This document shows, piece by piece, positions 9,763 to 58,035 of a DNA stretch of 64,000 nt (positions are counted from its first letter, which is position 1; each line of letters opens with the position of its first letter). The stretch is taken from positions 62,001 to 126,000 of IMG/VR virus record IMGVR_UViG_3300021057_000274; one strand, 5' to 3'. The translations under genes and the position numbers were made by a program. Under the pieces are notes generated by a model. It searched no databases. It saw only the letters and a list, made by a program, of their open reading frames with translations, and was not told where the DNA came from.

Positions 9763-9836
9763 GCGGGTGTGGTACAATGGTAGCATGCAACCTTGCCAAG
9801 GTTGAGACGAGGGTTCGATTCCCTTCACCCGCTCCA
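9763..9836 (+). tRNA. tRNA-Gly(GCC)
   Basis: Cloverleaf, loop TTGCCAA, U73, CCA. Confidence 0.95.
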
Positions 9837-9899: not shown

Positions 9900-9970
9900 G
9901 CGGGTGTAGCTCAATGGTAGAGCAACTGCCTTCCAAGCAGAAGACGGGGGTCCGATTCCCCTCACCCGCT
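9900..9970 (+). tRNA. tRNA-Gly(UCC), no genomic CCA
   Basis: Cloverleaf, loop CTTCCAA. Confidence 0.9.
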
Positions 9971-9972
9971 CC

Positions 9973-10506: not shown

Positions 10507-10581
10507 GCGGAATTAGTTCAGTGGCTAGAACGAGAGCTTCCCAAGCTCAAGACGCGGGTCCGATTCCCGCATTCCGCTCCA
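10507..10581 (+). tRNA. tRNA-Gly(CCC)
   Basis: Cloverleaf, loop TTCCCAA, CCA. Confidence 0.95.
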
Positions 10582-18748: not shown

Positions 18749-18824
18749 GCGCCTGTAGCTCAGTGGAGAGAGTGCCGCGCTACGAACGCGGAGGTCGGGG
18801 GTTCGATCCCCTCCAGGCGTGCCA
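18749..18824 (+). tRNA. tRNA-Arg(ACG)
   Basis: Cloverleaf, CCA. Confidence 0.95.
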
Positions 18825-19028
18825 GAGGTTAAGTCGATGACCTCGATGTAACACCTAGAAGTCGACAACGCCGGTGAATCAGGGCGTGGGGAACCAAGTA
18901 CTGGTTGGATGCTGAAATGAAGCCGCGGTTTTACCCTTAAGCGCGGTGGATGACTGAGAAAGGGCGCTGTAGCCGGTCTAGCATGGGTGTCGAAGTCGAC
19001 TCCCCCTCGATCGGAGCGGTGACAAGAT

Positions 19029-19100
19029 ACGCCCGCCGATGGATTTTCGGCGCCAGGTCTTCTAAACCAGGATAGGAGGGTTCGATTCCTTCCGGGCGTG
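19029..19100 (+). tRNA. tRNA-Arg(UCU), no genomic CCA
   Basis: Loop CTTCTAA; A-A mismatch in anticodon stem. Confidence 0.75.
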
Positions 19101-19103
19101 CCT

Positions 19104-19177
19104 TCCCACATAGCTCAATGGTAGAGCCGCTGGTTGTGAACCAGATTGCCCGGGTCCGATTCCCGGTGTGGGACCCA
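19104..19177 (+). tRNA. tRNA-His(GUG)
   Basis: Loop TTGTGAA, C73, CCA. Confidence 0.9.
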
Positions 19178-19193
19178 GTAGTTGCAGTTCAAT

Positions 19194-19286
19194 TCCTCGG
19201 TACTCTAACGGTAAGAGACCTGGCTGTTAACCAGACGTATCCCGCCACCGAGCGGTATGGAGGTTCGAGTCCTCCCTGAGGAGCCA
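19194..19286 (+). tRNA. tRNA-Asn(GUU) with long variable region
   Basis: Loop CTGTTAA, G73, ~23-nt variable region. Confidence 0.85.
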
Positions 19287-19289
19287 AAT

Positions 19290-19364
19290 GGGTGCGTAGC
19301 TCAGTGGTAGAGCGGGAACCTGTTAAGTTCCGGGTCGAAGGTTTGATTCCTTCCGTGCCCTCCA
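19290..19364 (+). tRNA. tRNA-Asn(GUU)
   Basis: Loop CTGTTAA, CCA. Confidence 0.85.
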
Positions 19365-19375
19365 CAATTCAGTAA

Positions 19376-19441
19376 CCGGGAAGTCCTAGTGACGTATTGC
19401 CGCGGCTGCCATCGTTGGCACGTAGGCTAGGACTTCCCGGT
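19376..19441. repeat. 15-bp perfect inverted repeat hairpin
   Basis: accgggaagtcctag/ctaggacttcccggt. Confidence 0.8.
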
Positions 19442-19455
19442 AGAAGTACAACATT

Positions 19456-19530
19456 GGCTCATTGATGAATGGGTTATCATACTACCCTGTCACGGTAGGT
19501 TAGCGGGTTCGAGTCCCGCATGGGTCGCCA
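19456..19530 (+). tRNA. tRNA-Asp(GUC)
   Basis: Loop CTGTCAC, G73, CCA. Confidence 0.95.
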
Positions 19531-19534
19531 AAAT

Positions 19535-19615
19535 GCGCTTCGGGAGGTTGAATCTCAACAGGTCGGGTCGCTCCCGTCTGTAAAACATGGGTTAAATTCC
19601 TGTGGAAGCGCGCCA
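19535..19615 (+). ncRNA. tRNA-like RNA with non-canonical core
   Basis: gcgcttc/gaagcgc-G-CCA, degenerate T arm, no normal anticodon arm. Confidence 0.55.
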
Positions 19616-19660
19616 AAATTAGAGGCTGACGATTCTGGGCGGCAATCTAGAGTCGGCGGT

Positions 19661-19767
19661 TTGTCGTTGAGGGTGGCTCCTCAGGACCCCGAGTAGGACG
19701 GTGAGATCTTGCCGGATCGAGCCGTTTGAAACGGGTCCTGTCGGTGGTTCGATTCCACCACGACTTC
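19661..19767 (+). ncRNA. tRNA-like RNA with expanded anticodon arm
   Basis: gtcgt/acgac, D-like hairpin, ggaccc/gggtcc enclosing ~45 nt, canonical T arm. Confidence 0.5.
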
Positions 19768-19954
19768 ACTCTAACCCTCTTCATGAAGCTGTGGGTAGAT
19801 CACCCTGCCACAAATCGGGTGATGAGGTCCGATCGCCTTCGTCCGTGGCATGCATGGCGCCAGGGCGATACCCCAGCAGTAACTGCGGCCGTCACCGAAC
19901 TTTATGCGAGAAAGTTCAGCGGTGACGAGGAGGAGGCGAACTGCTCGTTCAGTT

Positions 19955-20029
19955 GTCCCATTCGTCTAGTGGCTAGGACACAACCCTTTCAAGGTTGAGA
20001 ACGGGGATCGAAACCCCGATGGGACACCA
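19955..20029 (+). tRNA. tRNA-Glu(UUC)
   Basis: Loop CTTTCAA, CCA. Confidence 0.95.
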
Positions 20030-20033
20030 CTAT

Positions 20034-20109
20034 CTGGGTGTAGGTCAGCGGCGAGACTGCCTGGTCCGGAGCCAGGAGGCCGTGGGTTCGAGTCCCACCA
20101 CCCAGACCA
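20034..20109 (+). tRNA. tRNA-Pro(CGG), C33
   Basis: C1-G72, A73; loop TCCGGAG. Confidence 0.9.
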
Positions 20110-20149
20110 AAGCGGCCCCCAGCGCCGCTCTAAGCCGAGGCTGGGGCAT

Positions 20150-20225
20150 CGGAGAGTCGCCTAGCGGCTATGGCGCCTGCTTTGGGAGCAGGATACCGTG
20201 GGTTCGAGTCCCACCTTTCCGACCA
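20150..20225 (+). tRNA. tRNA-Pro(UGG)
   Basis: Loop TTTGGGA, CCA. Confidence 0.95.
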
Positions 20226-20235
20226 ACACATCAAT

Positions 20236-20310
20236 CGCTTCTTGGCGGCAAGCTGCCGTGCTCCCACTAGAAGGGAGAGCGAGGAGGTTCACGCCCTCCA
20301 GGAGCGACCA
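20236..20310 (+). tRNA. atypical tRNA, UAG anticodon (Leu-like) without long arm
   Basis: Full cloverleaf plus CCA; loop ACTAGAA; D loop lacks GG; T loop TTCACGC. Confidence 0.55.
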
Positions 20311-20311
20311 C

Positions 20312-20385
20312 GGGTCCGTAGTTCAATGGTAGAATGTTACCTCGACACGGTAGAGACGAAGGTTCGATTCCTTCTGGACCCACCA
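20312..20385 (+). tRNA. tRNA-Val(GAC), C33
   Basis: Loop TCGACAC, CCA. Confidence 0.9.
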
Positions 20386-20391
20386 AAATTT

Positions 20392-20465
20392 GGGCTACAA
20401 GCTTTAAGGTGAAGCATCTGGCTCTTACCCAGAAGAACGGGGATCATTACCCCGGTAGCCCACCA
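20392..20465 (+). tRNA. tRNA-Lys(CUU)
   Basis: Loop CTCTTAC, CCA. Confidence 0.9.
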
Positions 20466-20468
20466 GCA

Positions 20469-20617
20469 TTCGGTAGTGACCTAACGTTCAGGACGAAAGG
20501 AATCGTGCGGTCGCCCTAGTACCAGCTCTGGGTGACTAAACGGAGTCGAGTAGGCCTGCTCGCAAAAGGGATCGGTCAGGGACTGGTACTCCAGAGGTTC
20601 GACTCCTCCTACCGGAC
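20469..20617 (+). ncRNA. 149-nt tRNA-like RNA with expanded D and anticodon arms
   Basis: ttcggtag/ctaccgga, agtaccag/ctggtact, GG-TTCGACT-CC T arm. Confidence 0.55.
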
Positions 20618-20625
20618 TAAACTAG

Positions 20626-20702
20626 GGTTCTTTAGCTCAGATGCGTAGAGCGCCGAGCTTACACCTCGGATGTCGGGGGTTCAAGTCCCTCAGGAACCAC
20701 CA
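20626..20702 (+). tRNA. tRNA-Val(UAC)
   Basis: Loop CTTACAC, CCA. Confidence 0.95.
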
Positions 20703-20704
20703 AT

Positions 20705-20780
20705 GGCGATGTGGTGAACTGGCTATCACGCGGCTCTCATAAGGCTGAGTAGACGGGATCGAAACCCTCCATCGCTACCA
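20705..20780 (+). tRNA. tRNA-Met or Ile2 (CAU)
   Basis: Loop CTCATAA, CCA; identity not resolvable by eye. Confidence 0.9.
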
Positions 20781-20881
20781 TTCTAGGAAGTTGGGACTGC
20801 TCAAGCGGACGGAGTCCGGTAGCCCTCGCGGGGAGACCAATGAGTTGTGGTTCGATTCAACGCCTAGCTTTTATTGCGCTT

Positions 20882-20956
20882 CCCTCATTCGTCTAATGGT
20901 CAGGGCCCGTGCTTGATAGGCGCGTGACGGTGGTTCGATTCCATCATGAGGGACCA
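20882..20956 (+). tRNA. tRNA-Ile(GAU)
   Basis: Loop TTGATAG, CCA. Confidence 0.9.
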
Positions 20957-21046
20957 ACAGCAGCCGAGAAGCAGGCCCGTCGGTCGGTTAGAGAGCCTTC
21001 CGCACGTGCGCTCCGTGAAGCCACGGCAAACGGACTGCTGCATTAT

Positions 21047-21121
21047 CAGGGTGTAGCTCAGTGGGAGAGTGCTACGTCGGGAACGTAGAGGCCGCAGGTT
21101 CAATCCCTGCCACCCTGACCA
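21047..21121 (+). tRNA. tRNA-Pro(GGG), C33
   Basis: C1-G72, A73; loop TCGGGAA. Confidence 0.9.
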
Positions 21122-21224
21122 ATAGCTGGCTTGCAAGTGACGAGAGGTCATCATGCTTCGGAGCGCACGCTGGGGATAAGCTCCCAGCGCAGCGACCTAG
21201 ACGGCAAGCTGGCGGGCCTTATTT

Positions 21225-21295
21225 CAGAGCGTAGCGTAGTGGTAGCGTACCTGGCCTGGAACCAGGAGGTGTTGGTTCGATTCCAGCCGCTCTGA
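21225..21295 (+). tRNA. tRNA-Pro(UGG), C33, no genomic CCA
   Basis: C1-G72, A73; loop CCTGGAA. Confidence 0.85.
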
Positions 21296-21297
21296 CC

Positions 21298-21385
21298 GGG
21301 GGAAGATGTAGGTTCGAATCCTATCCAATGGCCATAAGCCCGTGAGGGTGGCTGGCAGGTAGCTCAACCGGCAGAGCAGCTCCCC
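21298..21385 (+). ncRNA. circularly permuted tRNA-like RNA (T arm before D arm; YrlA-like topology)
   Basis: GTAGG-TTCGAAT-CCTAT precedes TAGCTC-AACCGGCA-GAGC; ends gggga/tcccc pair. Confidence 0.6.
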
Positions 21386-21391
21386 TTTCTG

Positions 21392-21467
21392 GTACATTAG
21401 CTCATGGGGTTAGAGCGCGCGCCCGATAAGCGCGGGGTGGAAGGTTCGAGTCCTTCATGTACCACCA
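21392..21467 (+). tRNA. tRNA-Ile(GAU), C33
   Basis: Loop CCGATAA, CCA. Confidence 0.9.
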
Positions 21468-21600
21468 GACAACACCGTTGCTTCTCACCGAGAGAAGCCA
21501 GCTAGCAAGCGAAGCAGACATTCGTCTAGATCACTGCGACTGGACCCGGAATCCCTCGCGTGGTGGCCGATTGTCGGCTAGGACGGATTCGTTGTCTACT

Positions 21601-21673
21601 GGGGGATGTAGCCGGGGCACAGGAACGCCTTGCAAGCGATCCGCGATGGGTTCAACTCCCATATCCTCCACCA
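21601..21673 (+). tRNA. tRNA-Ala(UGC), atypical D and anticodon stems
   Basis: G3-U70, loop CTTGCAA, CCA. Confidence 0.75.
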
Positions 21674-21774
21674 GATCTTTAGCTCAAACGGGTAAGAGCG
21701 GCGGGACAGATAACCCGCGTCAAGGTGAGCTACGGCGAGCCGAGTGCGGCGACCCCATGCCGTAAGATCTACCA
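21673..21774 (+). ncRNA. tRNA-like RNA with 8-nt anticodon loop and replaced T arm
   Basis: agatctt/aagatct-A-CCA, canonical D arm, gcggg-ACAGATAA-cccgc, tacggc/gccgta arm. Confidence 0.6.
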
Positions 21775-21778
21775 AACT

Positions 21779-21849
21779 GGGCTGTTAGTTTAGCGGGAAA
21801 ACACTGCGCTTGCACCGCGGAATCCGGGGTTCGACTCCCCGACGGTCCA
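21779..21849 (+). tRNA. tRNA-Ala(UGC), no genomic CCA
   Basis: G3-U70, loop CTTGCAC. Confidence 0.9.
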
Positions 21850-21863
21850 CCCACAGATAGGAG

Positions 21864-22052
21864 ATGATCATGTTACCGATCGACGAAGCTGTCAAGCTCA
21901 CCGACATGGATGAGCTGGGTCGTGAGGAGTGGGAGCGTCTCTTCATCTCGACGAACCCGATGTGGAACGTCAGCCCGACCGAGGTCATGAGCGAGGTCAG
22001 AAGGTTGGGTGAACGTCGTAAGGAGCTCCTCAAGGGAGTTCGCTGGTTCTAA
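21864..22052 (+). CDS. small hypothetical protein inside tRNA array
   Basis: AGGAG RBS, 62 aa. Confidence 0.65.
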   Translation: MIMLPIDEAVKLTDMDELGREEWERLFISTNPMWNVSPTEVMSEVRRLGERRKELLKGVRWF

Positions 22053-22057
22053 GCTGT

Positions 22058-22131
22058 TGGGGATTGGTGAAATGGTATCATGTGAGATTCTGACTCTCAA
22101 GTCGTAGGTTCGATTCCTACATCCCCTGCCA
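22058..22131 (+). tRNA. tRNA-Gln(CUG)
   Basis: Loop TTCTGAC, G73, CCA. Confidence 0.95.
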
Positions 22132-22180
22132 CACAACGTCCCTCCACGCCTCTCAACGATGCGCACCCAGGAGGGCCTCT

Positions 22181-22253
22181 GTGCCTCAGACCAATCTGGT
22201 GATGGACCGAGCCTGAAAGCCTCGGAAGCTCGGTTCGATTCCGAGGGGGCACA
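22181..22253 (+). tRNA. tRNA-Phe(GAA), no genomic CCA
   Basis: Loop CTGAAAG; C31-C39 mismatch. Confidence 0.8.
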
Positions 22254-22255
22254 CC

Positions 22256-22348
22256 GGTAGGTGGCGCTGGCGCGCGGCTGGGCCTTATAGACCCGGGAGA
22301 CTGGCCGGACTGGCTGGAACGGCGAGGGTTCGAATCCCCGACCTACCA
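22256..22348 (+). tRNA. tRNA with UAU anticodon (Ile-type) and long variable arm
   Basis: ggtaggt/acctacc-A; loop CTTATAG; ~25-nt variable region. Confidence 0.65.
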
Positions 22349-22453
22349 CCTGTAAGAATCTCCCGAGGTTTGACCCGAGGAGTCGTTAGAGAAGATGATA
22401 TCTCGCTGGCGACGGCCAGAGAACCCCGGGGATGACAGACTCCCGGGACGATT

Positions 22454-22529
22454 GGCCCTTAAGCTAATCAGGTGAAAGCGCCGGTCTGAAAAGCCGGAGA
22501 GTCTGGTTCGATACCAGAAGGGGCCACCA
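22454..22529 (+). tRNA. tRNA-Phe(GAA)
   Basis: Loop CTGAAAA, CCA. Confidence 0.95.
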
Positions 22530-22547
22530 ATACAGGAGGATCGCCAA

Positions 22548-22634
22548 ATGTTCAAAGCTTGGTGGGACAATGGGGCAACGAGAGGCTTTGGGATGCGCTT
22601 ATTCCGGAGCTGGCTTTGTGGTGATTGCTGCTAG
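22548..22634 (+). CDS. 28-aa Trp/Cys-rich peptide
   Basis: AGGAGG RBS; MFKAWWDNGATRGFGMRLFRSWLCGDCC. Confidence 0.45.
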   Translation: MFKAWWDNGATRGFGMRLFRSWLCGDCC

Positions 22635-22653
22635 AGCGATTCCGGACAGACAG

Positions 22654-22731
22654 ATGACATGGAGCTGGTACTTCTTTCTCGGATTTCGCGTACGTGGAAA
22701 GCACTTAATTGATTTTCGCTGGACGAAGTAG
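22654..22731 (+). CDS. 25-aa aromatic-rich peptide
   Basis: MTWSWYFFLGFRVRGKHLIDFRWTK; weak RBS. Confidence 0.35.
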   Translation: MTWSWYFFLGFRVRGKHLIDFRWTK

Positions 22732-22737
22732 ATCTGT

Positions 22738-22810
22738 TGGGGTGAGGATTGGCATCTACGGATGGCTTTGAACCATCTCGGACACGGTTCGATTCCGTGC
22801 GCCCCTGCCA
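22738..22810 (+). tRNA. tRNA-Gln(UUG)
   Basis: Loop CTTTGAA, G73, CCA. Confidence 0.85.
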
Positions 22811-22966
22811 AGGTTGATGGAATGATCATCGACGCCTAGAAGAGCGTGCACGCTTCCTCCAGAGCGGCTAGACGTGAGGAGGATTTTGGATGAAGGGCTA
22901 TCCTCGTTCGATTCGAGGCGTCCTGAACGAAACGGCGCCGAGTCGGTGGAAGCCCGGCGCCTGCAT

Positions 22967-23038
22967 GTCCCGTTGGATTTCCGGGTAGATCGCTGGGACT
23001 TCACCCCAGAGAGACGGGTTCAACTCCCGTACGGGACG
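22967..23038 (+). tRNA. tRNA-Glu(UUC), C33, no genomic CCA
   Basis: Loop ACTTCAC, G73. Confidence 0.85.
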
Positions 23039-23045
23039 CCCCCAC

Positions 23046-23134
23046 GGGGCGCGACGCTGAAGACACCGCCGCGGGCTCAACGCTAGGCCACCGCGGTAAG
23101 ACTTCGGGGCGGACGGTTTCCGCGCGCTCCACCA
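23046..23134 (+). ncRNA. Ala-acceptor tRNA-like RNA resembling a tmRNA TLD with no mRNA domain
   Basis: ggggcgc/gcgctcc with G3-U70, A73, CCA; stemless D region; accgc/gcggt arm. Confidence 0.55.
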
Positions 23135-23151
23135 AATGATACAATAGCTAG

Positions 23152-23907
23152 ATGCTCTACGTAGGAACCAGCGGCTTCCAGTACAAGCACTGGAACGACG
23201 GCGTGTTCTACCCGTCTGGCGTCAAGGATCGCTTGGCGTTTCTCAGCCAACGGATGAACGCTCTCGAGATCAACGCGTCGTTCTACAGCATTCCAAAACC
23301 GGGGAGCGTGCGGCGCTGGAGCGAGAAGCTTCCGCAGAACTTCAAGCTAACGCTCAAGGCTCCTCGGTCGGTCACGCACCGACGTCGCCTCAAGCTGCGG
23401 AGCGACCCGACGATCAAGCAAGGCTGGGACCTCCTCCGCTACTTCTCGGAGGGCGTTCTTCAGATCGCTCCGCAGCAGCGAGGACCTGTTCTCGTGCAGT
23501 TGGAGCACAGATTTAAGATCGATCTCGACCGCTTAGAGGCCGTGCTGGAGTTCTTCAGAGTTCTCCAGCTGACCGTTGCGCTCGAGGTAAGGTGTACCTC
23601 CTGGCTTCGGATGGAGACGCTCAGGCTGCTTCGAGAGTATCGAGGCGCGTTGGTCTCCGCGGATTGGAGGGAGTGCACGGTGCCGATCTACGACACGGGA
23701 AGCTTCGTGTACGTGCGCCGCCACGGGTCGCTCGGACGATACTTCGGGTCATACTCGAGGGCCAAGCTCCAGGCTGATCTCGACGCGGTAGCGCCGTACC
23801 TAGAGCAAGGGCGCGACGTCTACGTCTTCTTCAACAATGACGGCGGCGGCGCGGCCCCGAGGAACGCAGTAAGCATGCTTAAGTTAGCAGATGTCCGATT
23901 CGTCTAG
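23152..23907 (+). CDS. DUF72 (YecE-like) family protein
   Basis: YVGTSGFQY.HW..FYP, EINASFY, KAP..TH, FFNN. Confidence 0.9.
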   Translation: MLYVGTSGFQYKHWNDGVFYPSGVKDRLAFLSQRMNALEINASFYSIPKPGSVRRWSEKLPQNFKLTLKAPRSVTHRRRLKLRSDPTIKQGWDLLRYFSEGVLQIAPQQRGPVLVQLEHRFKIDLDRLEAVLEFFRVLQLTVALEVRCTSWLRMETLRLLREYRGALVSADWRECTVPIYDTGSFVYVRRHGSLGRYFGSYSRAKLQADLDAVAPYLEQGRDVYVFFNNDGGGAAPRNAVSMLKLADVRFV

Positions 23908-23967
23908 TGGTAAGGACGCTAGCCCCTCAAGCTGGAAACCCGGGTTCGATTCCCGGCTCGGACGCCA
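23893..23967 (+). tRNA. tRNA-Glu(CUC), C33
   Basis: Loop CCCTCAA, CCA; overlaps DUF72 stop. Confidence 0.9.
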
Positions 23968-23968
23968 C

Positions 23969-24042
23969 GCGGATTTGGTCTAATGGTATGACGTGAGATC
24001 GCCAGTCTCAAAGCGCGGGTTCGATTCCCGCAATCCGCTCCA
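23969..24042 (+). tRNA. tRNA-Gly(GCC), C33
   Basis: Loop TCGCCAG, U73, CCA. Confidence 0.9.
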
Positions 24043-24117
24043 ACGTTGGTCGCGCGCTTGACCGTTCCGCGAGATAAGAGAGGAGGTCTCTAAAATGAGA
24101 TCCGCCAACGTTTCAAT

Positions 24118-24192
24118 GGTACCCATGGTGTAATGGAAGCACTTCTCCCTGTGAAGGAGGTAGCACCGGATCGATACCGGTTGGGTACCCCA
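24118..24192 (+). tRNA. tRNA-His(GUG) with G-1
   Basis: G-1:C73, loop CTGTGAA, CCA. Confidence 0.95.
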
Positions 24193-24195
24193 TAA

Positions 24196-24270
24196 CTCGC
24201 TGTGGTGAAACGGACATCACGATCCTCTCCTAAAGGGTAAGTCCAGGTTCAATTCCTGGCAGCGAGGCCA
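24196..24270 (+). tRNA. tRNA-Arg(CCU)
   Basis: Loop CTCCTAA, CCA. Confidence 0.95.
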
Positions 24271-24271
24271 T

Positions 24272-24346
24272 CTCCGGTCCAGTGGCATTCTGGCACAGCG
24301 GCTACGAACCGCAGTTGCGGGAGTTCGATTCTCTCACCGGGGTCCA
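24272..24346 (+). tRNA. tRNA-Arg(ACG)
   Basis: Loop CTACGAA, CCA. Confidence 0.8.
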
Positions 24347-24353
24347 AACACAT

Positions 24354-24427
24354 GTCGGTGTGGTCCAATGGCAGGGCGATTGGCTGCAACCCAATAGACG
24401 GGGGTTCGATTCCCTTCACCGACTCCA
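24354..24427 (+). tRNA. tRNA-Cys(GCA)
   Basis: Loop CTGCAAC, U73, CCA. Confidence 0.95.
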
Positions 24428-24630
24428 AAGAAAAAGCGGCGCCCGATGAGTTGGGCGCCGCTGGAGGACCGGCCCTTCGCAGGGAGGGGAGGAGGGGCCG
24501 GTTGGACGAATTTCAATGTATCACTCTCTCCCGAGAAAGTAAACAGATTCTTGCAAGAAGAAAGCACTTCGACCTCAGCCTGGCCGGGCGGTCGAAAAGT
24601 TGGGGTAAGAGCCCTCATGGCTAGGCGCAG

Positions 24631-24704
24631 GCCCGGTTCGTACAGTGGTAGTACGCCTGTTTCGTAAACAGGATGCGGGGGTCCGATTCCCTCACTGGGC
24701 ACCA
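24631..24704 (+). tRNA. tRNA-Thr(CGU)
   Basis: Loop TTCGTAA, CCA. Confidence 0.95.
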
Positions 24705-24705
24705 T

Positions 24706-24780
24706 CTCGCTGTAGTGAAGTGGACATCACGGTCTCCTCCGAAGGGACAAGCCCAGGTTCGATTCCTGGCAGCGGGGCCA
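24706..24780 (+). tRNA. tRNA-Arg(CCG)
   Basis: Loop CTCCGAA, CCA; body nearly identical to Arg(CCU). Confidence 0.95.
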
Positions 24781-24798
24781 AGCTACATAAATAGCCTC

Positions 24799-25125
24799 AT
24801 GAAGCTCTCAGACCTCTTCGAGACCAAGTCCAACTTTTACGTGAAGCTGTGGGGGAAGGTGAACGACGTCCAGATCGACGGCGTCTCCGACCTCGAGGAC
24901 CTCCACGAGAAGATCGGCACAGGCGCTTCGAATCCGATCAAGAAGAAGATTGAGGCGGCGTTCGCCGAGCTGGTCAACGCTAAAGGCGACCACTACGCCG
25001 CCGAGATTCAAGAGGTGATCTGGGAGCACAATGACGAGTTCTTCGGCGTTGACCTCTACGTCAGCACTCCAGACCTTGACGGTGAAGCTCCCCGCACGGT
25101 GCGCGGCGAAGTTCACCAGTCGTGA
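24799..25125 (+). CDS. hypothetical, putative virion internal protein
   Basis: TAAATA 24788; MKLSDLFE. Confidence 0.75.
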   Translation: MKLSDLFETKSNFYVKLWGKVNDVQIDGVSDLEDLHEKIGTGASNPIKKKIEAAFAELVNAKGDHYAAEIQEVIWEHNDEFFGVDLYVSTPDLDGEAPRTVRGEVHQS

Positions 25126-25454
25126 GACTCAACGAGATCTTCTCCTACGAGGACGACGAGGAGCGTCGCATTCAAGCTCGTCGCAAGCGCGACACGTACG
25201 GTGCTCCACTACATCCCAGCAAGGCCAACACCTTCGTCGCCAAGTTGCTCGACAAGCATGACGGCAACCCGAAGGCGGCACTCGCTGAGCTCGTCGACGA
25301 GATCGACGACTACCAGCGGAGCCGCGGCAAGAACGGCCCGATGATGACGCTCTACACCGCGATGCACCAGATGCTCTTGGACTACGTCAAGAACCCAAGC
25401 GCCTTTCAGCGGTTCATGCAAAAGGTTGTCAAGACTCCGCCCGATAAACTTTGA
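25122..25454 (+). CDS. hypothetical, putative virion internal protein
   Basis: GTGA coupling; MRLNEIF. Confidence 0.7.
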   Translation: MRLNEIFSYEDDEERRIQARRKRDTYGAPLHPSKANTFVAKLLDKHDGNPKAALAELVDEIDDYQRSRGKNGPMMTLYTAMHQMLLDYVKNPSAFQRFMQKVVKTPPDKL

Positions 25455-25513
25455 CGGTGAAGCCTTCTCTTGTAAAGAAGCGGAAGTCGGTTCGAATCCG
25501 GCATCGGGCACCA
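25439..25513 (+). tRNA. tRNA-Thr(UGU)
   Basis: Loop CTTGTAA, CCA; overlaps upstream CDS end. Confidence 0.9.
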
Positions 25514-25524
25514 AACTCAACAAC

Positions 25525-25598
25525 GCTCTTGTAGTCCATTGGTAAGATGCATCCTTGGTAAGGATGAGAACAGGGTTCGATTCCCTGCTGGAGCACCA
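25525..25598 (+). tRNA. tRNA-Thr(GGU)
   Basis: Loop TTGGTAA, CCA. Confidence 0.9.
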
Positions 25599-25614
25599 CG
25601 TAGAAAGTCATCAA

Positions 25615-25854
25615 ATGAATCTCAAGGACATGGTCTCAGGCAACAAGCTCGTGCGGTTCTCCTTTTACCGTGAGGGCCAGCTCTGGTACAAGACGGAGTG
25701 CGGCTTCGAGTTTCCCGTGCCCACCGATCCCAACGAGATCGGCACCGCCGTCTTCCTCGCGGAGGACAAGGCGCTGCTCTTCATGCGGTACATCAGGAAG
25801 CACCTCGACTATCTCAACAAGGCCAAGCAAGAACAAGCTGGAGATGCCGGTTAA
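25615..25854 (+). CDS. hypothetical protein
   Basis: 79-aa ORF with phage-like codon use. Confidence 0.7.
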   Translation: MNLKDMVSGNKLVRFSFYREGQLWYKTECGFEFPVPTDPNEIGTAVFLAEDKALLFMRYIRKHLDYLNKAKQEQAGDAG

Positions 25855-25969
25855 GACCCGGCCGGGCGCGCGTGAGTTACCGCGGCACGTAGTTTAAACC
25901 TAGAACGCCAGCTACTCACTTAGGAGTCAAACATGACGCACCTCCGAAAACATCCCGCTACACCTCGAC

Positions 25970-26675
25970 GGGAGAGTGGTGTTAACGGTTGAGCACAGCG
26001 GACTTATTCATGAGCTTGATGCGCTATGTAAAATAGACGTCATGCTCATGTGTCAGCACTGCAATAGATCCACATCGCAACGTCAAGCGCTCATCATGCA
26101 TGAGCGGTCGTGTAAGCAGAATCCTAATAGAGTGCCCGGGAAGAATTCCTGGTCCAATCCAACCTACAAAATGTCGGAAGAGACTAGGCAGAAGCTTCGT
26201 GAGAGCACGATCCGAAGAAATCGAAGCATGTCTCTAGAGTGCGCAGGAAGATCTCTGAGGGGCGGATCAGGTATCTGCGTGACCATCCTGAGATGGTGCC
26301 ATACAAACTCAATCATAAATCTAAGGGTAGATCTTTCCCGGAGAGATACTGGGGAGAGCTCCTGAAGAAATACGGTCTAGAGTTCGTCGAGCAGTTTCAG
26401 GAATCTACCTACACGCTTGACTTCGCATTCCTTGATCGCAAGATCGACCTCGAGATTGACGGAGAACAACACTACGTCGATCCTAGGATTGTTTCCTCTG
26501 ATCAGCGCCGAAATGCTTTTCTTGAGGGACGAGGATGGAAGATTGTTCGAGTGCGCTGGTCTAAGTACCAGCAGCTTTCTGGAGATGATCGCGAAAAGTT
26601 CGTCACGAATCTCGTTGAAAGCCTGACGACAGGTTAATCCGACAGGTCTCGGTTCGAATCCGAGTTCTCCTACCA
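25970..26675 (+). tRNA. tRNA-Lys(UUU) split by 628-nt insert (exons 25970-26005, 26634-26675)
   Basis: Joined exons give gggagag/ttctcct-A-CCA and cgga-CTT|TTAA-tccg. Confidence 0.8.
26042..26637 (+). CDS. EDxHD/DUF559 homing endonuclease with Zn finger and NUMOD3-like repeats; one -1 frameshift near 26239
   Basis: CQHC..HERSC; SEETRQKL; ER..LDF..LEIDGEQH..DQRRN..GWK.VR. Confidence 0.8.
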
Positions 26676-26749
26676 CGTAATTGTGTGTGTTCTTTTGAGT
26701 GATTTTGAGATATAATGTCTCATATTCAACGGTCCTGGAGGCGGGAAAC

Positions 26750-27148
26750 GTGGAAAAGATCACCAAGTTCGACAAACACAATCTTCAACTCCTTCGCCAA
26801 GAGATGAACGCCGCGCTAGCCACAGTCGGGGCGAAGTACGGCATCAAGGCAAACATCGGTAACATCAAGTACAGCGAGTCGGCATTCTCTTGCCCGCTAG
26901 CGGTGATCGTTGAATCCGCGGTCGCAGATCCCCGGCTCGAGAGCGTGGCGCCAGAATCGATCATCCACCTCAAAAAGAAGTGCGGTGACAAGGCCCTCCT
27001 CAAGCAGATCACCTACAACGGCCGCAAGATGGTGGTCGTCGGACTACGCGGCAGCAATTTTCTGGTGCGTGTTGACGGTGTCGACGGCGTCCGGAAGTTC
27101 AAGGGCCGTTGCTTCAGCGAAATATACGACGCGATCCTGAACCAATAG
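26750..27148 (+). CDS. hypothetical protein
   Basis: GGAGG RBS, TATAAT promoter upstream. Confidence 0.75.
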   Translation: MEKITKFDKHNLQLLRQEMNAALATVGAKYGIKANIGNIKYSESAFSCPLAVIVESAVADPRLESVAPESIIHLKKKCGDKALLKQITYNGRKMVVVGLRGSNFLVRVDGVDGVRKFKGRCFSEIYDAILNQ

Positions 27149-27359
27149 AATCGCATAAATCGAATGATGCCTCCCGGGTAACCGGGAGCGCAAGCGGAGC
27201 TAGATGACCTGATCTAGCTTCGGCCGTCTCTGGAATTAGCGTCGAGCGTCACGTTGACGCGCGCAAGCTAAGGAGTTACTCCTGAAGCCTCGCGTGATGC
27301 CGCACGCCGGACCCAGTTGGGGCGTATCAGGTAGCTTGCATTTTTCTAGGGAGCAGATC

Positions 27360-28025
27360 GTGCTGTACACGTTTGTCGGAGATGTCCACGGAAAGTGGGA
27401 GGCCGTCGAAGCGGCCCTGGCCAACGACGGCCAGGTGATCTTCGTGGGTGACATCGTCGACTCGTACGGAGATCGAGGAGTAGAAGATTATCGCCGCTGT
27501 TACGATCTCATCCTCGCCGCGATCGAGAAGGGTAAGGCTCGCGCGATCTTCGGTAACCACGAGCTCTCGTACTACATGCCGTATACACATGCGGCGTCAG
27601 GGAAGACAGACGCGTCGATCGACATGATGAAGGAGTACGAGGCCAAGCTCATGCAGAAGTTCGAGCCGTTTATTCTGCTTAACTCGCGATTTCTGGTGTC
27701 ACACGCCGGGCTCAGCAATGAGATCTGGGAAGCTGGATATCTCGATCAAGCCGATGACTTGCAAGCTCGCCTCACGATGTGGTGGCATGATCTTAAGTCA
27801 CCTATGCACTGGATCGGTGTCGTGCGTGGCGGAAAACAATTCGTCGGCGGGATGTTCTGGTGCGACTTTCGCCGGGAATTTCAACCAGTATCTGGGTTGA
27901 CTCAAGTGTTCGGTCACACCCGCGGGCGTGACATCCGCTTCGCGGAAGATCCAGTCAAGGGTGGGTCTTATTGCATCGACTGTCTAGACTTCACGGAGAA
28001 CAAGTTCCTCCAGCTAGACGTCTAA
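27360..28025 (+). CDS. calcineurin-like metallophosphoesterase
   Basis: GDVHG, GDIVD, GNHE, HAG, GHT. Confidence 0.92.
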   Translation: MLYTFVGDVHGKWEAVEAALANDGQVIFVGDIVDSYGDRGVEDYRRCYDLILAAIEKGKARAIFGNHELSYYMPYTHAASGKTDASIDMMKEYEAKLMQKFEPFILLNSRFLVSHAGLSNEIWEAGYLDQADDLQARLTMWWHDLKSPMHWIGVVRGGKQFVGGMFWCDFRREFQPVSGLTQVFGHTRGRDIRFAEDPVKGGSYCIDCLDFTENKFLQLDV

Positions 28026-28034
28026 GAAGTAACC

Positions 28035-28108
28035 GCCTCTGTACGTCAATGGCAGACCACCGCTCCCACACAGCGGGAACTCTGGTTCGATTCCAGACAG
28101 AGGCACCA
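28035..28108 (+). tRNA. tRNA-Val(CAC), C33
   Basis: Loop CCCACAC, CCA. Confidence 0.9.
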
Positions 28109-29381: not shown

Positions 29382-30887
29382 ATGACGGTAGCCCAGGCGG
29401 TTCAGCAAGCTTTCGAAGATTCCGAACAACAAGCTGCGTTCTTCGCCTGGGTCAGAGACGGCTTCGGCTCCTGCATCCTCGAAGCGGTCGCCGGCGCCGG
29501 CAAGACCTCCACCCTCCTCAAGGCGCTCGCGATGATGGTCGGTACCATCTTCTTCGGCGCTTACAACAAGGGCATCGCGGTCGAGATCAAGGCCAAGGCC
29601 GCCTCGATCATGCGCCCTGGCCTCTTCATCAGCACCATGCACGCCGCCGGCCTGAAGGGCTGCCGCAGCAAGTGGAATAAGACCGAGGTCGACAACTCCA
29701 AGTGCACCAAGATCTTCCGCCGCATCCCCGAGGGCGACCCGCGACGCCAGTTCGAGGGTCAAGTTCTCTCCCTCGTGTCCTACGCCAAGCAAGCCGCCTT
29801 CGGTGTCACCGGGCAGCCAGCGATCGAGAACACCTCCGCGTGGGTTCGTCTCGCCGAGCACTTCGACGTCGAGTGCGGCGAGAGCAACGAGCACCTCGAC
29901 ACGATCATCAAGCTCGCTCAGCGCCTCCTGGTCGCCTCGAACGCCGCCTGCGCCGAGTCGCTCGACTACGACGACATGGTGTACGCGCCGCTGGTGCACC
30001 GCGTCAAGATGTGGAAGCACGACTGGGTGCTCATCGACGAGGCGCAAGACACCAACGCGGCTCGTCGTCTCCTCGCGCTCGCCATGCTCAAGCCGAACGG
30101 CCGCCTCGTCGCCGTCGGTGATCGTCACCAGGCGATCTACGGCTTCACCGGCGCTGACCACGACGCGCTCGACCTGATCGGCGCCGCCGTCAACGCCCAG
30201 CGCATGCCCCTCACCGTGACCTTCCGCTGCCCGCAAGAGGTCGTCAAGGTTGCCCAGCGGTACGTGTCGCACATCCAAGCCGCTCCGACCGCTCCGATGG
30301 GTGTGGTTCGTGAGCTCAAGACCGACCTCATCACCGAGGCCAAACCGGGCGACGTCGTCCTCTGCCGCTTCAACAAGCCGCTCATCGAGAACGTCTACGC
30401 CTTCATCGCCGCCGGCGTCCCGGCCAAGGTGGAGGGCCGTGAGATCGGCAACGGCCTCAAGCAACTGGCCGGGCGCTGGAAGGTCAAGTCGTACGACGCG
30501 CTCCTCTCCCGCCTCGACGCCTTCGTCGAGCGCGAGACCAAGAAGCTGACCGAGCGCGACCAGCTGACCAAGCTCGAGGGTGTCCTCGACCGCGTCGAGT
30601 GCCTGAAGGTGATCATCGGTCGGGCCATGGCCAAGAAGCCGAGCACGTCCACCCCGGTCGAGGACGTCAACGCCGAGATCGACGCGATCTTCGCCGATAA
30701 CGTCCACGGCGGGAAGGTCGTGACGTTCTCGACGATCCACAAGGCCAAGGGCCGTGAGTGGAACAAGGTGTGCTGGCTCCAGATGCCGCCCTCCCCGTTC
30801 GCCAAGCAGGACTGGGAGATGCAGCAAGAGACCAACCTGATGTACGTCGCAGCGACCCGCGCTAAAAAGGAGCTCGTTCTGTGCTAG
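29382..30887 (+). CDS. UvrD/Rep-family SF1 helicase
   Basis: AGAGKT, DEAQD, GD.HQAIYGF.GA, TIHKAKG.EW, YVAATRA. Confidence 0.95.
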   Translation: MTVAQAVQQAFEDSEQQAAFFAWVRDGFGSCILEAVAGAGKTSTLLKALAMMVGTIFFGAYNKGIAVEIKAKAASIMRPGLFISTMHAAGLKGCRSKWNKTEVDNSKCTKIFRRIPEGDPRRQFEGQVLSLVSYAKQAAFGVTGQPAIENTSAWVRLAEHFDVECGESNEHLDTIIKLAQRLLVASNAACAESLDYDDMVYAPLVHRVKMWKHDWVLIDEAQDTNAARRLLALAMLKPNGRLVAVGDRHQAIYGFTGADHDALDLIGAAVNAQRMPLTVTFRCPQEVVKVAQRYVSHIQAAPTAPMGVVRELKTDLITEAKPGDVVLCRFNKPLIENVYAFIAAGVPAKVEGREIGNGLKQLAGRWKVKSYDALLSRLDAFVERETKKLTERDQLTKLEGVLDRVECLKVIIGRAMAKKPSTSTPVEDVNAEIDAIFADNVHGGKVVTFSTIHKAKGREWNKVCWLQMPPSPFAKQDWEMQQETNLMYVAATRAKKELVLC

Positions 30888-56928: not shown

Positions 56929-58035
56929 GTGGACCCCAAGATCTATCTGGTAGGCGGCGCTGTACGAGACCACGTGCTGGGAGTTCTCAGCAAGGATCGT
57001 GACTACGTCGTCGTCGGGGCCACTCCCGAGTGGATGATTGAGCGCGGCTTCAAGCGGGTGGGAGCCGACTTCCCGGTTTTCTTGCACCCTGAGACCAGGT
57101 ACGAGTACGCCCTGGCGCGGCAAGAGCGCAAGACCGGCCCAGGCTATCACGGCTTCGACACTCGGTTCGACCCCAGCATCACGCTGGAGGACGATCTGCG
57201 TCGTCGTGACTTGACGATCAACGCGATGGCGATGACCGACGAGGGTGAGATCATCGACCCGTTCGGCGGCTTGACCGACCTGAAAGCTGGCGTGTTGCGT
57301 CACACCAGCGAGGCCTTCGCCGAGGATCCGTTGCGCGTCTTGCGCGTCGCTCGCTTCGCCGCTCGCTATGATTTCACGATCGACCAGACCACCGTCGAGC
57401 TGGCGCGGAAGATCGTCGCTTCAGGCGAGCTGAACTCCCTGCCGCGCGAGCGCTTCTGGACCGAGCTGTGGAAGGGTTTCAACGAGAAGCATCCCTCCAA
57501 GATGATCTCCGCTCTGGAGAACATGAACGCGATTGCGACGGCACCGCTGAACCAGTACTTCGGCAGAAATTTCTCTCTGGACGTCACCGTCGAGAAGATG
57601 AAAGCCGCCGAAAAGAAGTCACTCCCGGCGATCGCCGTTGCAGCTCTGACCCTGGGGCCGATAGACGCCGACAAAGCGAACGAGCTGCGGGTGCCCTCAG
57701 ACGTGTACCGCGTTCATGTCTGGGCCAATAAGCTGGCGATGCTGCACACCCATGACACGGCTGAGAAGATGATCAAGTTCATGGGAAGCATCAAGTATGA
57801 CATCACCAACCCCGACTACTATGCGGCGCTGAGAACTAGCGAGCTGATCGCGTCGCTGATGCTGGACGATCGCAACTTTTCTCGGTGGCACGAGATGAGC
57901 GGCCGAATGGTCATGGTCGACGCCGAGCTGAAGAAGACCAACTTCAAGGAGGTCGCCGAGAACGGGCCGAAGGCGACCATCAGGGAGCGGATTAACGCCG
58001 CTCGCTTAGCCGCGGCCCGGAGAGCTTTCAGCTAA
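56929..58035 (+). CDS. cca: tRNA nucleotidyltransferase (CCA-adding enzyme, class II, no HD domain)
   Basis: [36 protein letters not shown]. Confidence 0.95.

What the first reader, a model, noticed from the sequence alone, without database searches (positions are those of the whole stretch)
20034..28108. Nine tRNAs replace near-universal U33 with C
Seen loops: Pro tcCGGag, tcGGGaa, ccUGGaa; Val tcGACac, ccCACac; Ile ccGAUaa; Glu acUUCac, ccCUCaa; Gly tcGCCag. Several coexist with a U33 copy, and the three Pro variants also have A37 instead of G37. Known: U33 forms the U-turn, and phage tRNAs can carry loop changes that evade anticodon nucleases. Inference: nuclease-resistant or TrmD-independent backup tRNAs.
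Basis: partly seen in the sequence, partly recalled or inferred. Interest (0 to 1): 0.72.

Follow-up and report, generated by a model that had tools for sequence, protein, structure and literature searches.

The report
Phage tRNAs with C33 replacing U33
Nine well-formed tRNA genes of a 396-kb soil phage carry C where almost every tRNA has U (position 33), and the same change recurs in the same tRNA types in many unrelated phages but not in bacterial housekeeping tRNAs, so it looks like a selected trait of phage tRNAs and not decay.

Summary
ARAGORN finds 41 tRNAs in the window and 48 in the phage genome. Infernal confirms the register where alignments were printed.

They are not pseudogenes. 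Eight keep the other invariant nucleotides, and together they read the phage's commonest Pro, Val, Ile, Glu and Gly codons.

They do not copy the host. The C33 form of tRNA-Ile(GAU) was absent from 401 Pseudomonadota genomes. Alphaproteobacterial tRNA-Val(GAC) was U33 in 29 of 29 cases. Fifty-nine scattered bacterial tRNAs were all U33.

The trait recurs. The same loops (Ile CCGAUAA, Val UCGACAC, Pro UCGGGAA, Glu CCCUCAA) occur in relatives and in cultured phages of Caulobacter, Rhodobacter, Ruegeria, Sulfitobacter, Sinorhizobium, Xanthomonas and Aeromonas. About 22% of viral tRNA-Ile(GAU) genes in an unbiased IMG/VR sample have C33. Seventy-one distinct copies keep the cloverleaf through compensatory changes.

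One exception is a chromosomal tRNA array beside an RtcB ligase in an Azoarcus genome, which has three C33 tRNA-Pro.

The mechanism is untested. The best guess is evasion of host enzymes that read the anticodon loop. The phage also encodes a T4 Rnl1-type tRNA-repair ligase and a CCA-adding enzyme. I found no paper describing this.

The parts
20034..20109 (+). tRNA-Pro(CGG), loop UCCGGAG: C33 and A37. It is the only CGG copy in the phage.
   Evidence: ARAGORN; Infernal 57.9 bits; keeps U8, A14, G18G19 and the T-loop. It reads CCG, which is 46% of Pro codons.
20312..20385 (+). tRNA-Val(GAC), loop UCGACAC: C33. It is the only GAC copy.
   Evidence: 63.9 bits. The same loop occurs in phages Phosso, RcXuper and X1, and UCGACAU in DSS3P8. 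It reads GUC, 52% of Val codons.
21047..21121 (+). tRNA-Pro(GGG), loop UCGGGAA: C33 and A37.
   Evidence: 64.2 bits. Phosso has the identical 17-nt anticodon arm, and DSS3P8 and RcXuper have the same loop. The arm lies in no tRNA of 185,579 species genomes.
21225..21297 (+). tRNA-Pro(UGG), loop CCUGGAA: C33 and A37. Its twin is the U33/G37 copy at 20150-20225.
   Evidence: 64.9 bits. Relatives G001 and G006 carry the same second copy as CUUGGAA, that is with U33.
21391..21467 (+). tRNA-Ile(GAU), loop CCGAUAA: C33. Its twin is the U33 copy at 20882-20956 (UUGAUAG).
   Evidence: 59.2 bits. The same loop occurs in relatives and at least five cultured phages and in at least 117 IMG/VR contigs. The same pair of copies occurs in relative G004.
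22966..23041 (+). tRNA-Glu(UUC), loop ACUUCAC: C33. This is the weakest of the nine, and its twin is the U33 copy at 19955-20029.
   Evidence: 46.4 bits. It ends CCC, not CCA, and was not listed in the Rfam gathering scan.
23893..23967 (+). tRNA-Glu(CUC), loop CCCUCAA: C33. It is the only CUC copy.
   Evidence: 51.7 bits with the register shown. Relatives G002 and G010 have the same loop on different stems. It reads GAG, 84% of Glu codons.
23969..24042 (+). tRNA-Gly(GCC), loop UCGCCAG: C33. Its twin is the U33 copy at 9763-9836.
   Evidence: 63.6 bits with the register shown. No other C33 Gly was seen among 71 Gly tRNAs of other phages.
28035..28108 (+). tRNA-Val(CAC), loop CCCACAC: C33. It is the only CAC copy.
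   Evidence: 51.1 bits. It reads GUG, 24% of Val codons.
18749..25598 (+). Dense co-directional array of 33 tRNA genes (4.8 per kb), most with an encoded CCA end. It holds eight of the nine C33 genes and three of their four U33 twins.
   Evidence: A metatranscriptome holds three exact short contigs at 20088-20222, 22739-22892 and 25243-25395. This is only a weak hint of transcription.
56929..58035 (+). tRNA nucleotidyltransferase (CCA-adding and repair enzyme).
   Evidence: PHROG 2244, E 1.7e-94. Best NCBIfam match is the multifunctional CCA addition/repair protein, E 1.7e-94.

Best explanation
The nine genes are real tRNAs kept by selection. They belong to a widespread class of supernumerary tRNAs, found in phages and at least one horizontally spread chromosomal array, in which the near-invariant U33 is replaced by C. 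The change is confined to a narrow set of isoacceptors: above all Ile(GAU) and Val, then Pro and Glu.

The proposed mechanism is inferred, not shown. C is the mildest substitute for U33, so the tRNA can still be charged and still decode; here the nine cover the phage's most used Pro, Val, Ile, Glu and Gly codons. The altered loop would no longer fit host proteins that read or cut at U33. These are chiefly anticodon-loop nucleases and toxins used in defence and bacterial competition, and secondarily host modification enzymes. The phage would then keep translating when the host's own U33 tRNAs of these types are cut or disabled.

A37 in place of G37 in the Pro tRNAs similarly removes dependence on TrmD.
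For: Real and constrained:
- All nine score 46-65 bits with Infernal.
- Eight of nine keep U8, A14, G18G19 and the T-loop, while several U33 tRNAs of the same phage do not.
- Seventy-one distinct C33 Ile(GAU) tRNAs keep the cloverleaf, with compensatory changes in 20 of 21 pairs.
- Glu(CUC) keeps CCCUCAA in three relatives on three different stems. The U33+C33 Ile pair is shared with a relative at 55% helicase identity.

Not host-like:
- The C33 Ile pattern was in 0 of 401 Pseudomonadota genomes, against 34 of 61 for the U33 pattern.
- Host Val(GAC) was U33 in 29 of 29.
- Fifty-nine scattered bacterial tRNAs were all U33.
- Reviews call U33 invariant in elongator tRNAs (PMC5041475, PMC11122139).

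Recurrent and isoacceptor-specific:
- Identical loops occur in seven cultured phages of unrelated types.
- In an unbiased IMG/VR sample, 15 of 69 tRNA-Ile(GAU) genes have C33.
- In other phages C33 is found in Ile 32%, Val 29%, Pro 13% and Glu 11%. It is 0% in His, Gln, Phe, Cys, Trp, Asp and Gly. The window's five families against the rest give 39/278 versus 21/967, p = 4e-13.

Conflict setting:
- The phage encodes a T4 Rnl1-type RNA ligase with the tRNA-specific C-terminal domain and a CCA repair enzyme.
- The chromosomal array with C33 Pro tRNAs lies beside RtcB.
- Loop changes that protect phage tRNAs from nucleases are an established idea (PMC10264068).
- Nucleases acting at or near this site exist: CdiA-CT EC536 cuts between positions 32 and 33 of tRNA-Ile(GAU) (PMC11724271), and an EndoU toxin prefers the tRNA-Glu(UUC) loop (PMC9086364).
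- E. coli t6A synthase failed on a U33C tRNA in vitro (PMC8887486).
Against: - No nuclease that needs U33 in these isoacceptors is known, and none was identified here.
- The host is unknown.
- No cleavage, charging or decoding data exist for any C33 phage tRNA.
- Close relatives such as G001 (51 tRNAs) have no C33 at all, so the trait is dispensable.
- Isoacceptor bias could also reflect differing tolerance of the change rather than targeted attack.
- The TsaBD structure shows no base-specific contact to U33, which conflicts with the in vitro U33C result (PMC13276492).
- Expression evidence is only three short metatranscriptome contigs, none covering a C33 position.
- The phage sets are related to one another and partly chosen through similarity to this array, so the p-values overstate independence.
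Confidence: 0.45

Rival explanations
1. Tolerated variation. Because the host supplies canonical tRNAs, supernumerary phage tRNAs are under relaxed constraint. U-to-C at position 33 is the least harmful change and drifts in wherever a given isoacceptor tolerates it. It confers no benefit.
For: - The trait is patchy among close relatives; G001, G006, G014 and G016 have none.
- On a tree with position 33 masked, C33 needs 10 changes against a shuffled mean of 14, so there is no single clade.
- The same phage also varies other 'invariant' uridines in T-loops.
- A33 and G33 are rare but do occur.
Against: - C33 tRNAs are among the most canonical in the phage.
- C33 persists while every stem pair turns over.
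- It reaches 22-32% in Ile and 29% in Val but 0% in seven families of similar size.
- C33 copies are often the only phage copy for the phage's top codons.
Confidence: 0.25
2. Independence from modification. C33, with A37, gives an open, pre-formed anticodon loop that needs no host modification at position 37 (m1G37, t6A37). This would allow fast mass production of working tRNA during infection.
For: - In tRNA-Pro, C33 goes with A37: 10 with A37 and 1 with G37, against 27 and 29 for U33 copies, p = 0.017.
- For Pro(CGG), Pro(GGG) and Gly(GCC), folding predicts that a U33 version would close to a 3-nt loop.
- Forty-six of 48 tRNAs of the phage have A37.
- The phage has no TrmD or TsaD.
Against: - Across phages, C33 is not enriched where positions 32 and 38 can pair (odds ratio 0.52, the wrong direction).
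- Six of the nine loops fold the same with U or C.
- The chromosomal-array C33 Pro tRNAs keep G37.
- Most A37 tRNAs do well with U33.
Confidence: 0.15
3. A role outside decoding. The C33 copies would act as decoys or regulators, for example by soaking up a nuclease, a synthetase or a sensor, while the U33 twins and host tRNAs do the translating.
For: Four of the nine have a U33 twin. In eukaryotes C33 marks initiator tRNAs with a special role (PMC5041475).
Against: Five of the nine are the phage's only copy for very common codons. Most IMG/VR carriers have only the C33 Ile copy in the stretch fetched. The encoded CCA ends and intact discriminator bases fit a tRNA that is charged.
Confidence: 0.07
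4. C33 is edited back to U33 in the RNA by a deaminase.
For: The phage encodes one cytidine/dCMP-deaminase-fold protein at G000:310914-311486.
Against: Its best match is the dCMP-deaminase type (ComEB). It scores far below every curated cut-off, and the TadA match is generic. No RNA read covers a C33 site. Carriers are too diverse to share one editing enzyme.
Confidence: 0.03
5. The nine are pseudogenes, or assembly or annotation artefacts.
For: Glu(UUC) at 22966 is weak: 46 bits, a CCC end, and it was missed by one scan.
Against: See the observation check. There are no read variants, independent assemblies agree, scores are high, and covariation is present.
Confidence: 0.03

Closest known systems
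Phage tRNAs with anticodon-loop changes proposed to escape host anticodon nucleases (van den Berg et al. 2023, PMC10264068; T5 tRNAs against PARIS and retron effectors, PMC11464382, PMC11555353)
   Same: They are phage-encoded, sit in large arrays, and differ from host counterparts inside the anticodon loop. The phage also carries tRNA-repair functions.
   Different: Those cases change variable loop positions next to known cleavage sites of known nucleases. Here the change is at the near-invariant U33, in Ile, Val, Pro and Glu tRNAs, and no nuclease is known. That paper does not mention position 33.
Eukaryotic initiator tRNA-Met with C33
   Same: A natural, functional tRNA with C33. C33 changes recognition by a loop-reading enzyme: yeast and E. 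coli t6A synthases reject it (PMC8887486).
   Different: Those are initiators of multicellular eukaryotes. The phage tRNAs are elongator types with Ile, Val, Pro, Glu and Gly anticodons and matching discriminator bases.
Long horizontally spread tRNA gene arrays of bacteria (L-arrays; PMC8421152, PMC4758250)
   Same: Dense supernumerary arrays shared among phages, plasmids and chromosomes, and linked to RtcB and translational stress. One such chromosomal array, in an Azoarcus genome, holds three C33 tRNA-Pro beside RtcB.
   Different: The two array papers found in the search hold no mention of U33. The window's array is in a lytic-type jumbo phage.
Candida tRNA-Ser(CAG) with G33
   Same: An elongator tRNA that works without U33 (PMC5041475).
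   Different: It is a single eukaryotic lineage, carries G rather than C, and is tied to codon reassignment.

Membership tests
Canonical elongator tRNA (Rfam RF00005) | Cloverleaf with a 7-nt anticodon loop, scoring above the family cut-off | tested here: met
   All nine score 46-65 bits against a cut-off of 29, with 5-bp stems around 7-nt loops.
Canonical elongator tRNA (Rfam RF00005) | U at position 33 | tested here: not met
   C33 in all nine.
Canonical elongator tRNA (Rfam RF00005) | Other invariant nucleotides (U8, A14, G18G19, T-loop) and a purine at position 37 | tested here: met
   Eight of nine pass all checks. The ninth fails only by an offset of the called 5' end. All nine have A37.
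Nuclease-evading phage tRNAs | Phage-encoded, with an anticodon loop that differs from the host counterpart | tested here: met
   The phage genome is shown. Host-type Ile, Val and Pro(CGG) tRNAs have U33. The true host is unknown, so the comparison is with Pseudomonadota in general.
Nuclease-evading phage tRNAs | A host nuclease that cuts the host tRNA at or near the changed position | not testable with these tools
   The host is unknown and no cognate nuclease was identified. Only analogies are available (PMC11724271, PMC9086364).
Nuclease-evading phage tRNAs | The variant resists cleavage and rescues infection | not testable with these tools
   This needs cleavage assays and phage genetics.
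tRNA pseudogenes | Broken stems, lost invariant nucleotides, low scores, no conservation | tested here: not met
   Only Glu(UUC) at 22966 is borderline.
Initiator tRNA with C33 | CAU anticodon and initiator identity | tested here: not met
   The anticodons are CGG, GGG, UGG, GAC, CAC, GAU, UUC, CUC and GCC.
tRNA array unit (at least 20 genes at 2 or more per kb, PMC4758250) | Gene number and density | tested here: met
   33 tRNA genes lie in 18749-25598, which is 4.8 per kb.

The most novel reading that the evidence does not exclude
U33-to-C defines a widespread and so far undescribed class of 'stealth' tRNAs in phages and mobile tRNA arrays. It accounts for about a fifth of viral tRNA-Ile(GAU) genes and a similar share of tRNA-Val. 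These tRNAs would stay active in translation while being invisible to a family of host defence or competition enzymes keyed on the invariant U33 of particular isoacceptors. If so, U33 would itself be an immune recognition mark, and the isoacceptor list (Ile, Val, Pro, Glu) would point to nucleases not yet discovered.
Probability: 0.3. Interest if true: 0.85.

Novelty: new variant of a known kind. Interest (0 to 1): 0.74.

Why it matters
U33 makes the U-turn of the anticodon loop and is treated as invariant in elongator tRNAs. A natural set of hundreds of diverse, structurally conserved C33 elongator tRNAs, limited to a few isoacceptors and to phage or accessory arrays, bears on two questions.

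- How far translation really needs U33.
- Which host factors phages are escaping or bypassing.

The question is directly testable, because cultured phage-host pairs carry the same variants. Examples are phiCbK on Caulobacter, which has a U33/C33 Ile pair, along with X1 on Xanthomonas, RcXuper on Rhodobacter, and DSS3P8 on Ruegeria.

The result could also reveal new tRNA-targeting defence enzymes. Separately, it offers modification-independent tRNA scaffolds for engineering.

Tried and rejected
1. Host mimicry. The 17-nt Pro(GGG) arm gave 46 hits in 185,579 species genomes, about the number expected by chance, and none lay in a tRNA. The C33 Ile pattern was in 0 of 401 Pseudomonadota genomes. 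Host Val(GAC) and Pro(CGG) have U33. One of the three host Pro(CGG) examples (L152) comes from the unpublished genome G063, and the point stands without it.

2. C33 as a general device to stop a U33-A37 pair from closing the loop. This holds for only three of the nine, and across phages the trend runs the other way.

3. A single C33 lineage. The tree is unresolved, with 10 changes against a shuffled mean of 14, so this is inconclusive.

4. Editing by a phage deaminase. The only deaminase-fold gene looks like a dCMP deaminase.

5. Phage-encoded IleRS/ValRS-type synthetase, TsaD, TrmD or RtcB. None was found.

6. Finding the host from the 'provirus' flanks. There are none. The record is a circularly permuted phage genome of about 395.7 kb.

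7. Recoding of TAG. Coding density is unchanged if TAG is read as sense, and TAG ends 74 of 404 ORFs.

8. Close relatives through the DUF72 gene or the 869-aa ORF. None was found. The helicase worked instead.

9. Literature. Searches found no description of C33 in phage tRNAs. The array search found no mention of U33 in the array papers. The library lacks most subscription journals.

10. T5, DLP_6 and Big4. These have no C33, so the trait is not universal in tRNA-rich phages.

Full report
**What is there.** The window is bases 62001-126000 of a 389,331-bp IMG/VR virus record from soil. ARAGORN finds 41 tRNA genes in the window and 48 in the genome, covering all 20 amino acids plus a CUA suppressor. 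Thirty-three of them form one co-directional array at 18749-25598. Each loop is closed by a complementary 5-bp stem, so the register is not in doubt. Infernal aligns the C of Gly(GCC) and Glu(CUC) opposite consensus U33. All nine score 46-65 bits against a family cut-off of 29. Two DNA runs cover 20000-25999 at depth 17 and 32 without any variant. The genome was also assembled independently in several samples. The weak member is Glu(UUC) at 22966-23041: it scores 46 bits, ends CCC, and was missed by the Rfam gathering scan.

**Not pseudogenes.** Eight of the nine keep U8, A14, G18G19 and a canonical T-loop. The ninth fails only because its called 5' end is offset by one base. Several U33 tRNAs of the same phage do deviate in their T-loops. 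The discriminator bases fit the anticodons, for example A73 for Pro, Val and Ile, G73 for Glu(CUC) and U73 for Gly, and eight of the nine encode CCA. The nine read the phage's most used codons: CCG 46%, CCC 23%, GUC 52%, GUG 24%, AUC 87%, GAG 84% and GGC 42%. For Pro(CGG), Pro(GGG), Val(GAC), Val(CAC) and Glu(CUC), the C33 gene is the phage's only copy. A soil metatranscriptome holds three exact short contigs on the array, but none covers a C33 site and DNA carry-over cannot be excluded.

**Not a copy of host tRNAs.** The host is unknown.
- The 17-nt arm of Pro(GGG) gave 46 hits in one genome for each of 185,579 species. That is about the chance expectation, and none of the hits is in a tRNA.
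- BLAST of that tRNA against 121 Alphaproteobacteria retrieved their Val(GAC) and Pro(CGG) genes. These share its stem, but their loops read UUGACAU (29 of 29) and UUCGGGA (3 of 3), that is U33, with G37 in Pro. One of the three Pro(CGG) examples lies in the unpublished genome G063, and the claim does not depend on it.
- A pattern for C33 tRNA-Ile(GAU) (YCGATAA, 13 free bases, then the T-arm) matched 0 of 401 Pseudomonadota genomes. The U33 form matched 34 of 61.
- ARAGORN on 78 tRNAs fetched from five bacterial genomes gave 59 scattered tRNAs, all U33. The remaining 19 lie in one accessory array, described below.
- Reviews state that U33 is invariant in elongator tRNAs. The cited exceptions are eukaryotic initiators (C33) and Candida tRNA-Ser (G33) (PMC5041475, PMC11122139).

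**The same change recurs in other phages.** Relatives were found through the UvrD-type helicase at 29382-30887. Several of them have C33.
- L049: Ile CCGAUAA and Val(GAC).
- G002 (345 kb): Ile CCGAUAA, Glu(CUC) CCCUCAA and Val(UAC).
- G004: Ile CCGAUAA together with a UUGAUAG twin, the same pair as in the window.
- G010: Glu(CUC) and two Glu(UUC).
- G012: Val(UAC).
- G001, G006, G014 and G016: none.

Unrelated cultured phages show the same loops.
- Ile CCGAUAA: Caulobacter phiCbK (beside a U33 twin), Rhodobacter RcXuper, Sulfitobacter phiCB2047-B, Xanthomonas X1 (twice) and the T4-like Aeromonas Aswh_1.
- Val(GAC) UCGACAC or UCGACAU: Sinorhizobium Phosso, Ruegeria DSS3P8, RcXuper and X1.
- Pro(GGG) UCGGGAA: Phosso, DSS3P8 and RcXuper.
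- No C33: Stenotrophomonas DLP_6, Microbacterium Big4 and coliphage T5.

Sixty-four of the 80 stored loci were confirmed by ARAGORN. A scan blind to position 33 gave 15 C33 and 54 U33 tRNA-Ile(GAU) genes, that is 22%.

**Selection and specificity.** Seventy-one distinct C33 Ile tRNAs keep the cloverleaf, and 20 of 21 base pairs show compensatory changes.

In phages other than this one, C33 frequency differs sharply by family. Ile in the Ile-selected loci was left out of these counts.

| Family | C33 / total |
|---|---|
| Ile | 9/28 |
| Val | 15/51 |
| Pro | 8/63 |
| Glu | 7/65 |
| Lys | 5/73 |
| Ser | 4/77 |
| Ala | 2/41 |
| Thr | 3/95 |
| Asn | 2/62 |
| Tyr | 1/39 |
| Leu | 2/106 |
| Met | 1/82 |
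| Arg | 1/86 |
| Gly | 0/71 |
| His, Gln, Phe, Cys, Trp, Asp | 0 each |

The five families hit in the window carry 39 of 278 against 21 of 967 for the rest (Fisher p = 4e-13). These phages are not independent, and some were chosen through similarity to this array, so the p-value is only indicative. On a tree of 71 viral Ile tRNAs with position 33 masked, C33 needs 10 changes against a shuffled mean of 14. That means either many origins or an unresolved tree.

**An exception that fits the pattern.** In an Azoarcus genome, a chromosomal stretch flanked by MurJ, LpxK, XseA and transaldolase genes holds 19 tRNA genes in 3.6 kb, directly beside an RtcB RNA ligase. Its Pro(GGG) and two Pro(UGG) genes have C33, here with G37. 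Such long arrays spread horizontally, also occur in phages, and in Anabaena are induced together with RtcB under translational stress (PMC8421152). C33 is therefore a trait of supernumerary tRNAs rather than of phages alone.

**How it may work.** This part is inferred. The phage carries a T4 Rnl1-type RNA ligase with the tRNA-specific C-terminal domain, at G000:42001-43194, outside the window. It also carries a CCA-adding and repair enzyme at 56929-58035 and a PTH2 peptidyl-tRNA hydrolase. This is the equipment of a phage whose tRNA supply is under attack.

Phage tRNAs that escape anticodon nucleases through loop changes are an established idea (PMC10264068). Relevant enzymes are known.
- CdiA-CT EC536 cuts tRNA-Ile(GAU) between C32 and U33 (PMC11724271).
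- An EndoU-type toxin prefers the tRNA-Glu(UUC) loop, and two CDI toxins are specific for tRNA-Ile(GAU) (PMC9086364).
- E. coli t6A synthase did not modify a U33C tRNA in vitro (PMC8887486), although the TsaBD structure shows no base-specific contact to U33 (PMC13276492).

The best reading is that C33 keeps the tRNA usable while spoiling recognition by one or more host loop-reading enzymes. No such enzyme was identified, and the host is unknown. I put this reading at 0.45.

**Rivals.**
- Near-neutral tolerated variation in redundant tRNAs (0.25). It is supported by patchiness among relatives. It is opposed by the strong isoacceptor bias and by long retention of C33 through stem turnover.
- Independence from position-37 modification (0.15). 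In tRNA-Pro, C33 goes with A37 (10:1 against 27:29, p = 0.017). Three of the nine loops would be predicted to close to 3 nt with U33. However, C33 is not enriched where positions 32 and 38 can pair (odds ratio 0.52).
- Decoy or regulatory roles, C-to-U editing, and pseudogenes are each unlikely, for the reasons given in the rival entries.

**The A37 point.** All three C33 Pro tRNAs have A37, and 46 of the phage's 48 tRNAs have A37. Across phages, 37 of 67 tRNA-Pro genes have A37. Lack of G37 excludes m1G37 by definition, so 'TrmD-independent' is correct. It is a broader habit of phage tRNAs and not tied to C33.

**Novelty.** Full-text searches found no description of C33 in phage or array tRNAs. 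The library lacks most subscription journals. I file this as a new variant of a known kind: phage tRNAs with altered anticodon loops.

Noticed in passing
window 61181-61255: A tRNA with anticodon CUA (amber suppressor, called 'Pyl' by ARAGORN), well formed with a CCA end. The genome still uses TAG as a stop (74 of 404 ORFs), and coding density does not rise if TAG is read as sense. Several other phages sampled also carry a CUA tRNA.
   Followed up: partly
window 9900-9972, 10507-10581, 19104-19177, 24631-24704 (T-loop TCCGATT); 19955-20029, 20392-20465, 20705-20780, 24119-24192 (ATCGAAA-type); 19290-19364 (TTTGATT): Nine U33 tRNAs of the phage change other 'invariant' T-loop uridines: U55 to C in four, U54 to A in four, and C56 to U in one. 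In the 78 bacterial tRNAs sampled, 77 had the canonical T-loop. This may be a second case of phage tRNAs dropping positions that the host normally modifies (m5U54, pseudouridine 55).
   Followed up: partly
window 19194-19286: A 93-nt tRNA-Asn(GUU) with a long extra arm, next to a normal 75-nt Asn copy. Over-long Asn or Lys tRNAs also appear in Phosso, X1, phiCbK and RcXuper annotations.
   Followed up: no
window 23152-23907: A DUF72 (YecE-like) gene sits inside the tRNA array between the two C33 Glu tRNAs and overlaps the start of tRNA-Glu(CUC) by about 15 bases. Its function is unknown.
   Followed up: no
window 12758-13708 and 27294-28025: An HD-domain protein resembling the SpoT/RelA hydrolase domain lies upstream of the main array. 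A calcineurin-like phosphoesterase, with a faint match to the bacterial Pnkp phosphatase domain, lies just before tRNA-Val(CAC).
   Followed up: partly
G000:C1:42001-43194 (outside the window; L302:6001-7194): T4 Rnl1-type RNA ligase with the T4_Rnl1_C domain, followed by an ATP-grasp (R2K) gene. A PARP-like gene lies about 3 kb downstream.
   Followed up: partly
whole record G000; L408-L411: The 'provirus' label is an artefact. Contigs of about 395.7 kb from at least three samples are circular permutations of one another and join the record's end to its start. The roughly 6 kb trimmed from the record encodes a ribosomal L7/L12-like protein, an M3 peptidase and HSP20. The genome also encodes an anti-Pycsar Apyc1-like protein and PTH2.
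   Followed up: yes
L421 = G023:C43:246400-250300; L433:13325-14470: An Azoarcus genome has a chromosomal array of 19 tRNA genes in 3.6 kb, directly beside RtcB. The array includes tRNA-Ile(UAU) and three C33 tRNA-Pro.
   Followed up: partly
whole genome: Only 2 of 48 tRNAs have G37. Leu(CAG), Leu(GAG) and Arg(CCG), which carry m1G37 in bacteria, have A37 here.
   Followed up: partly
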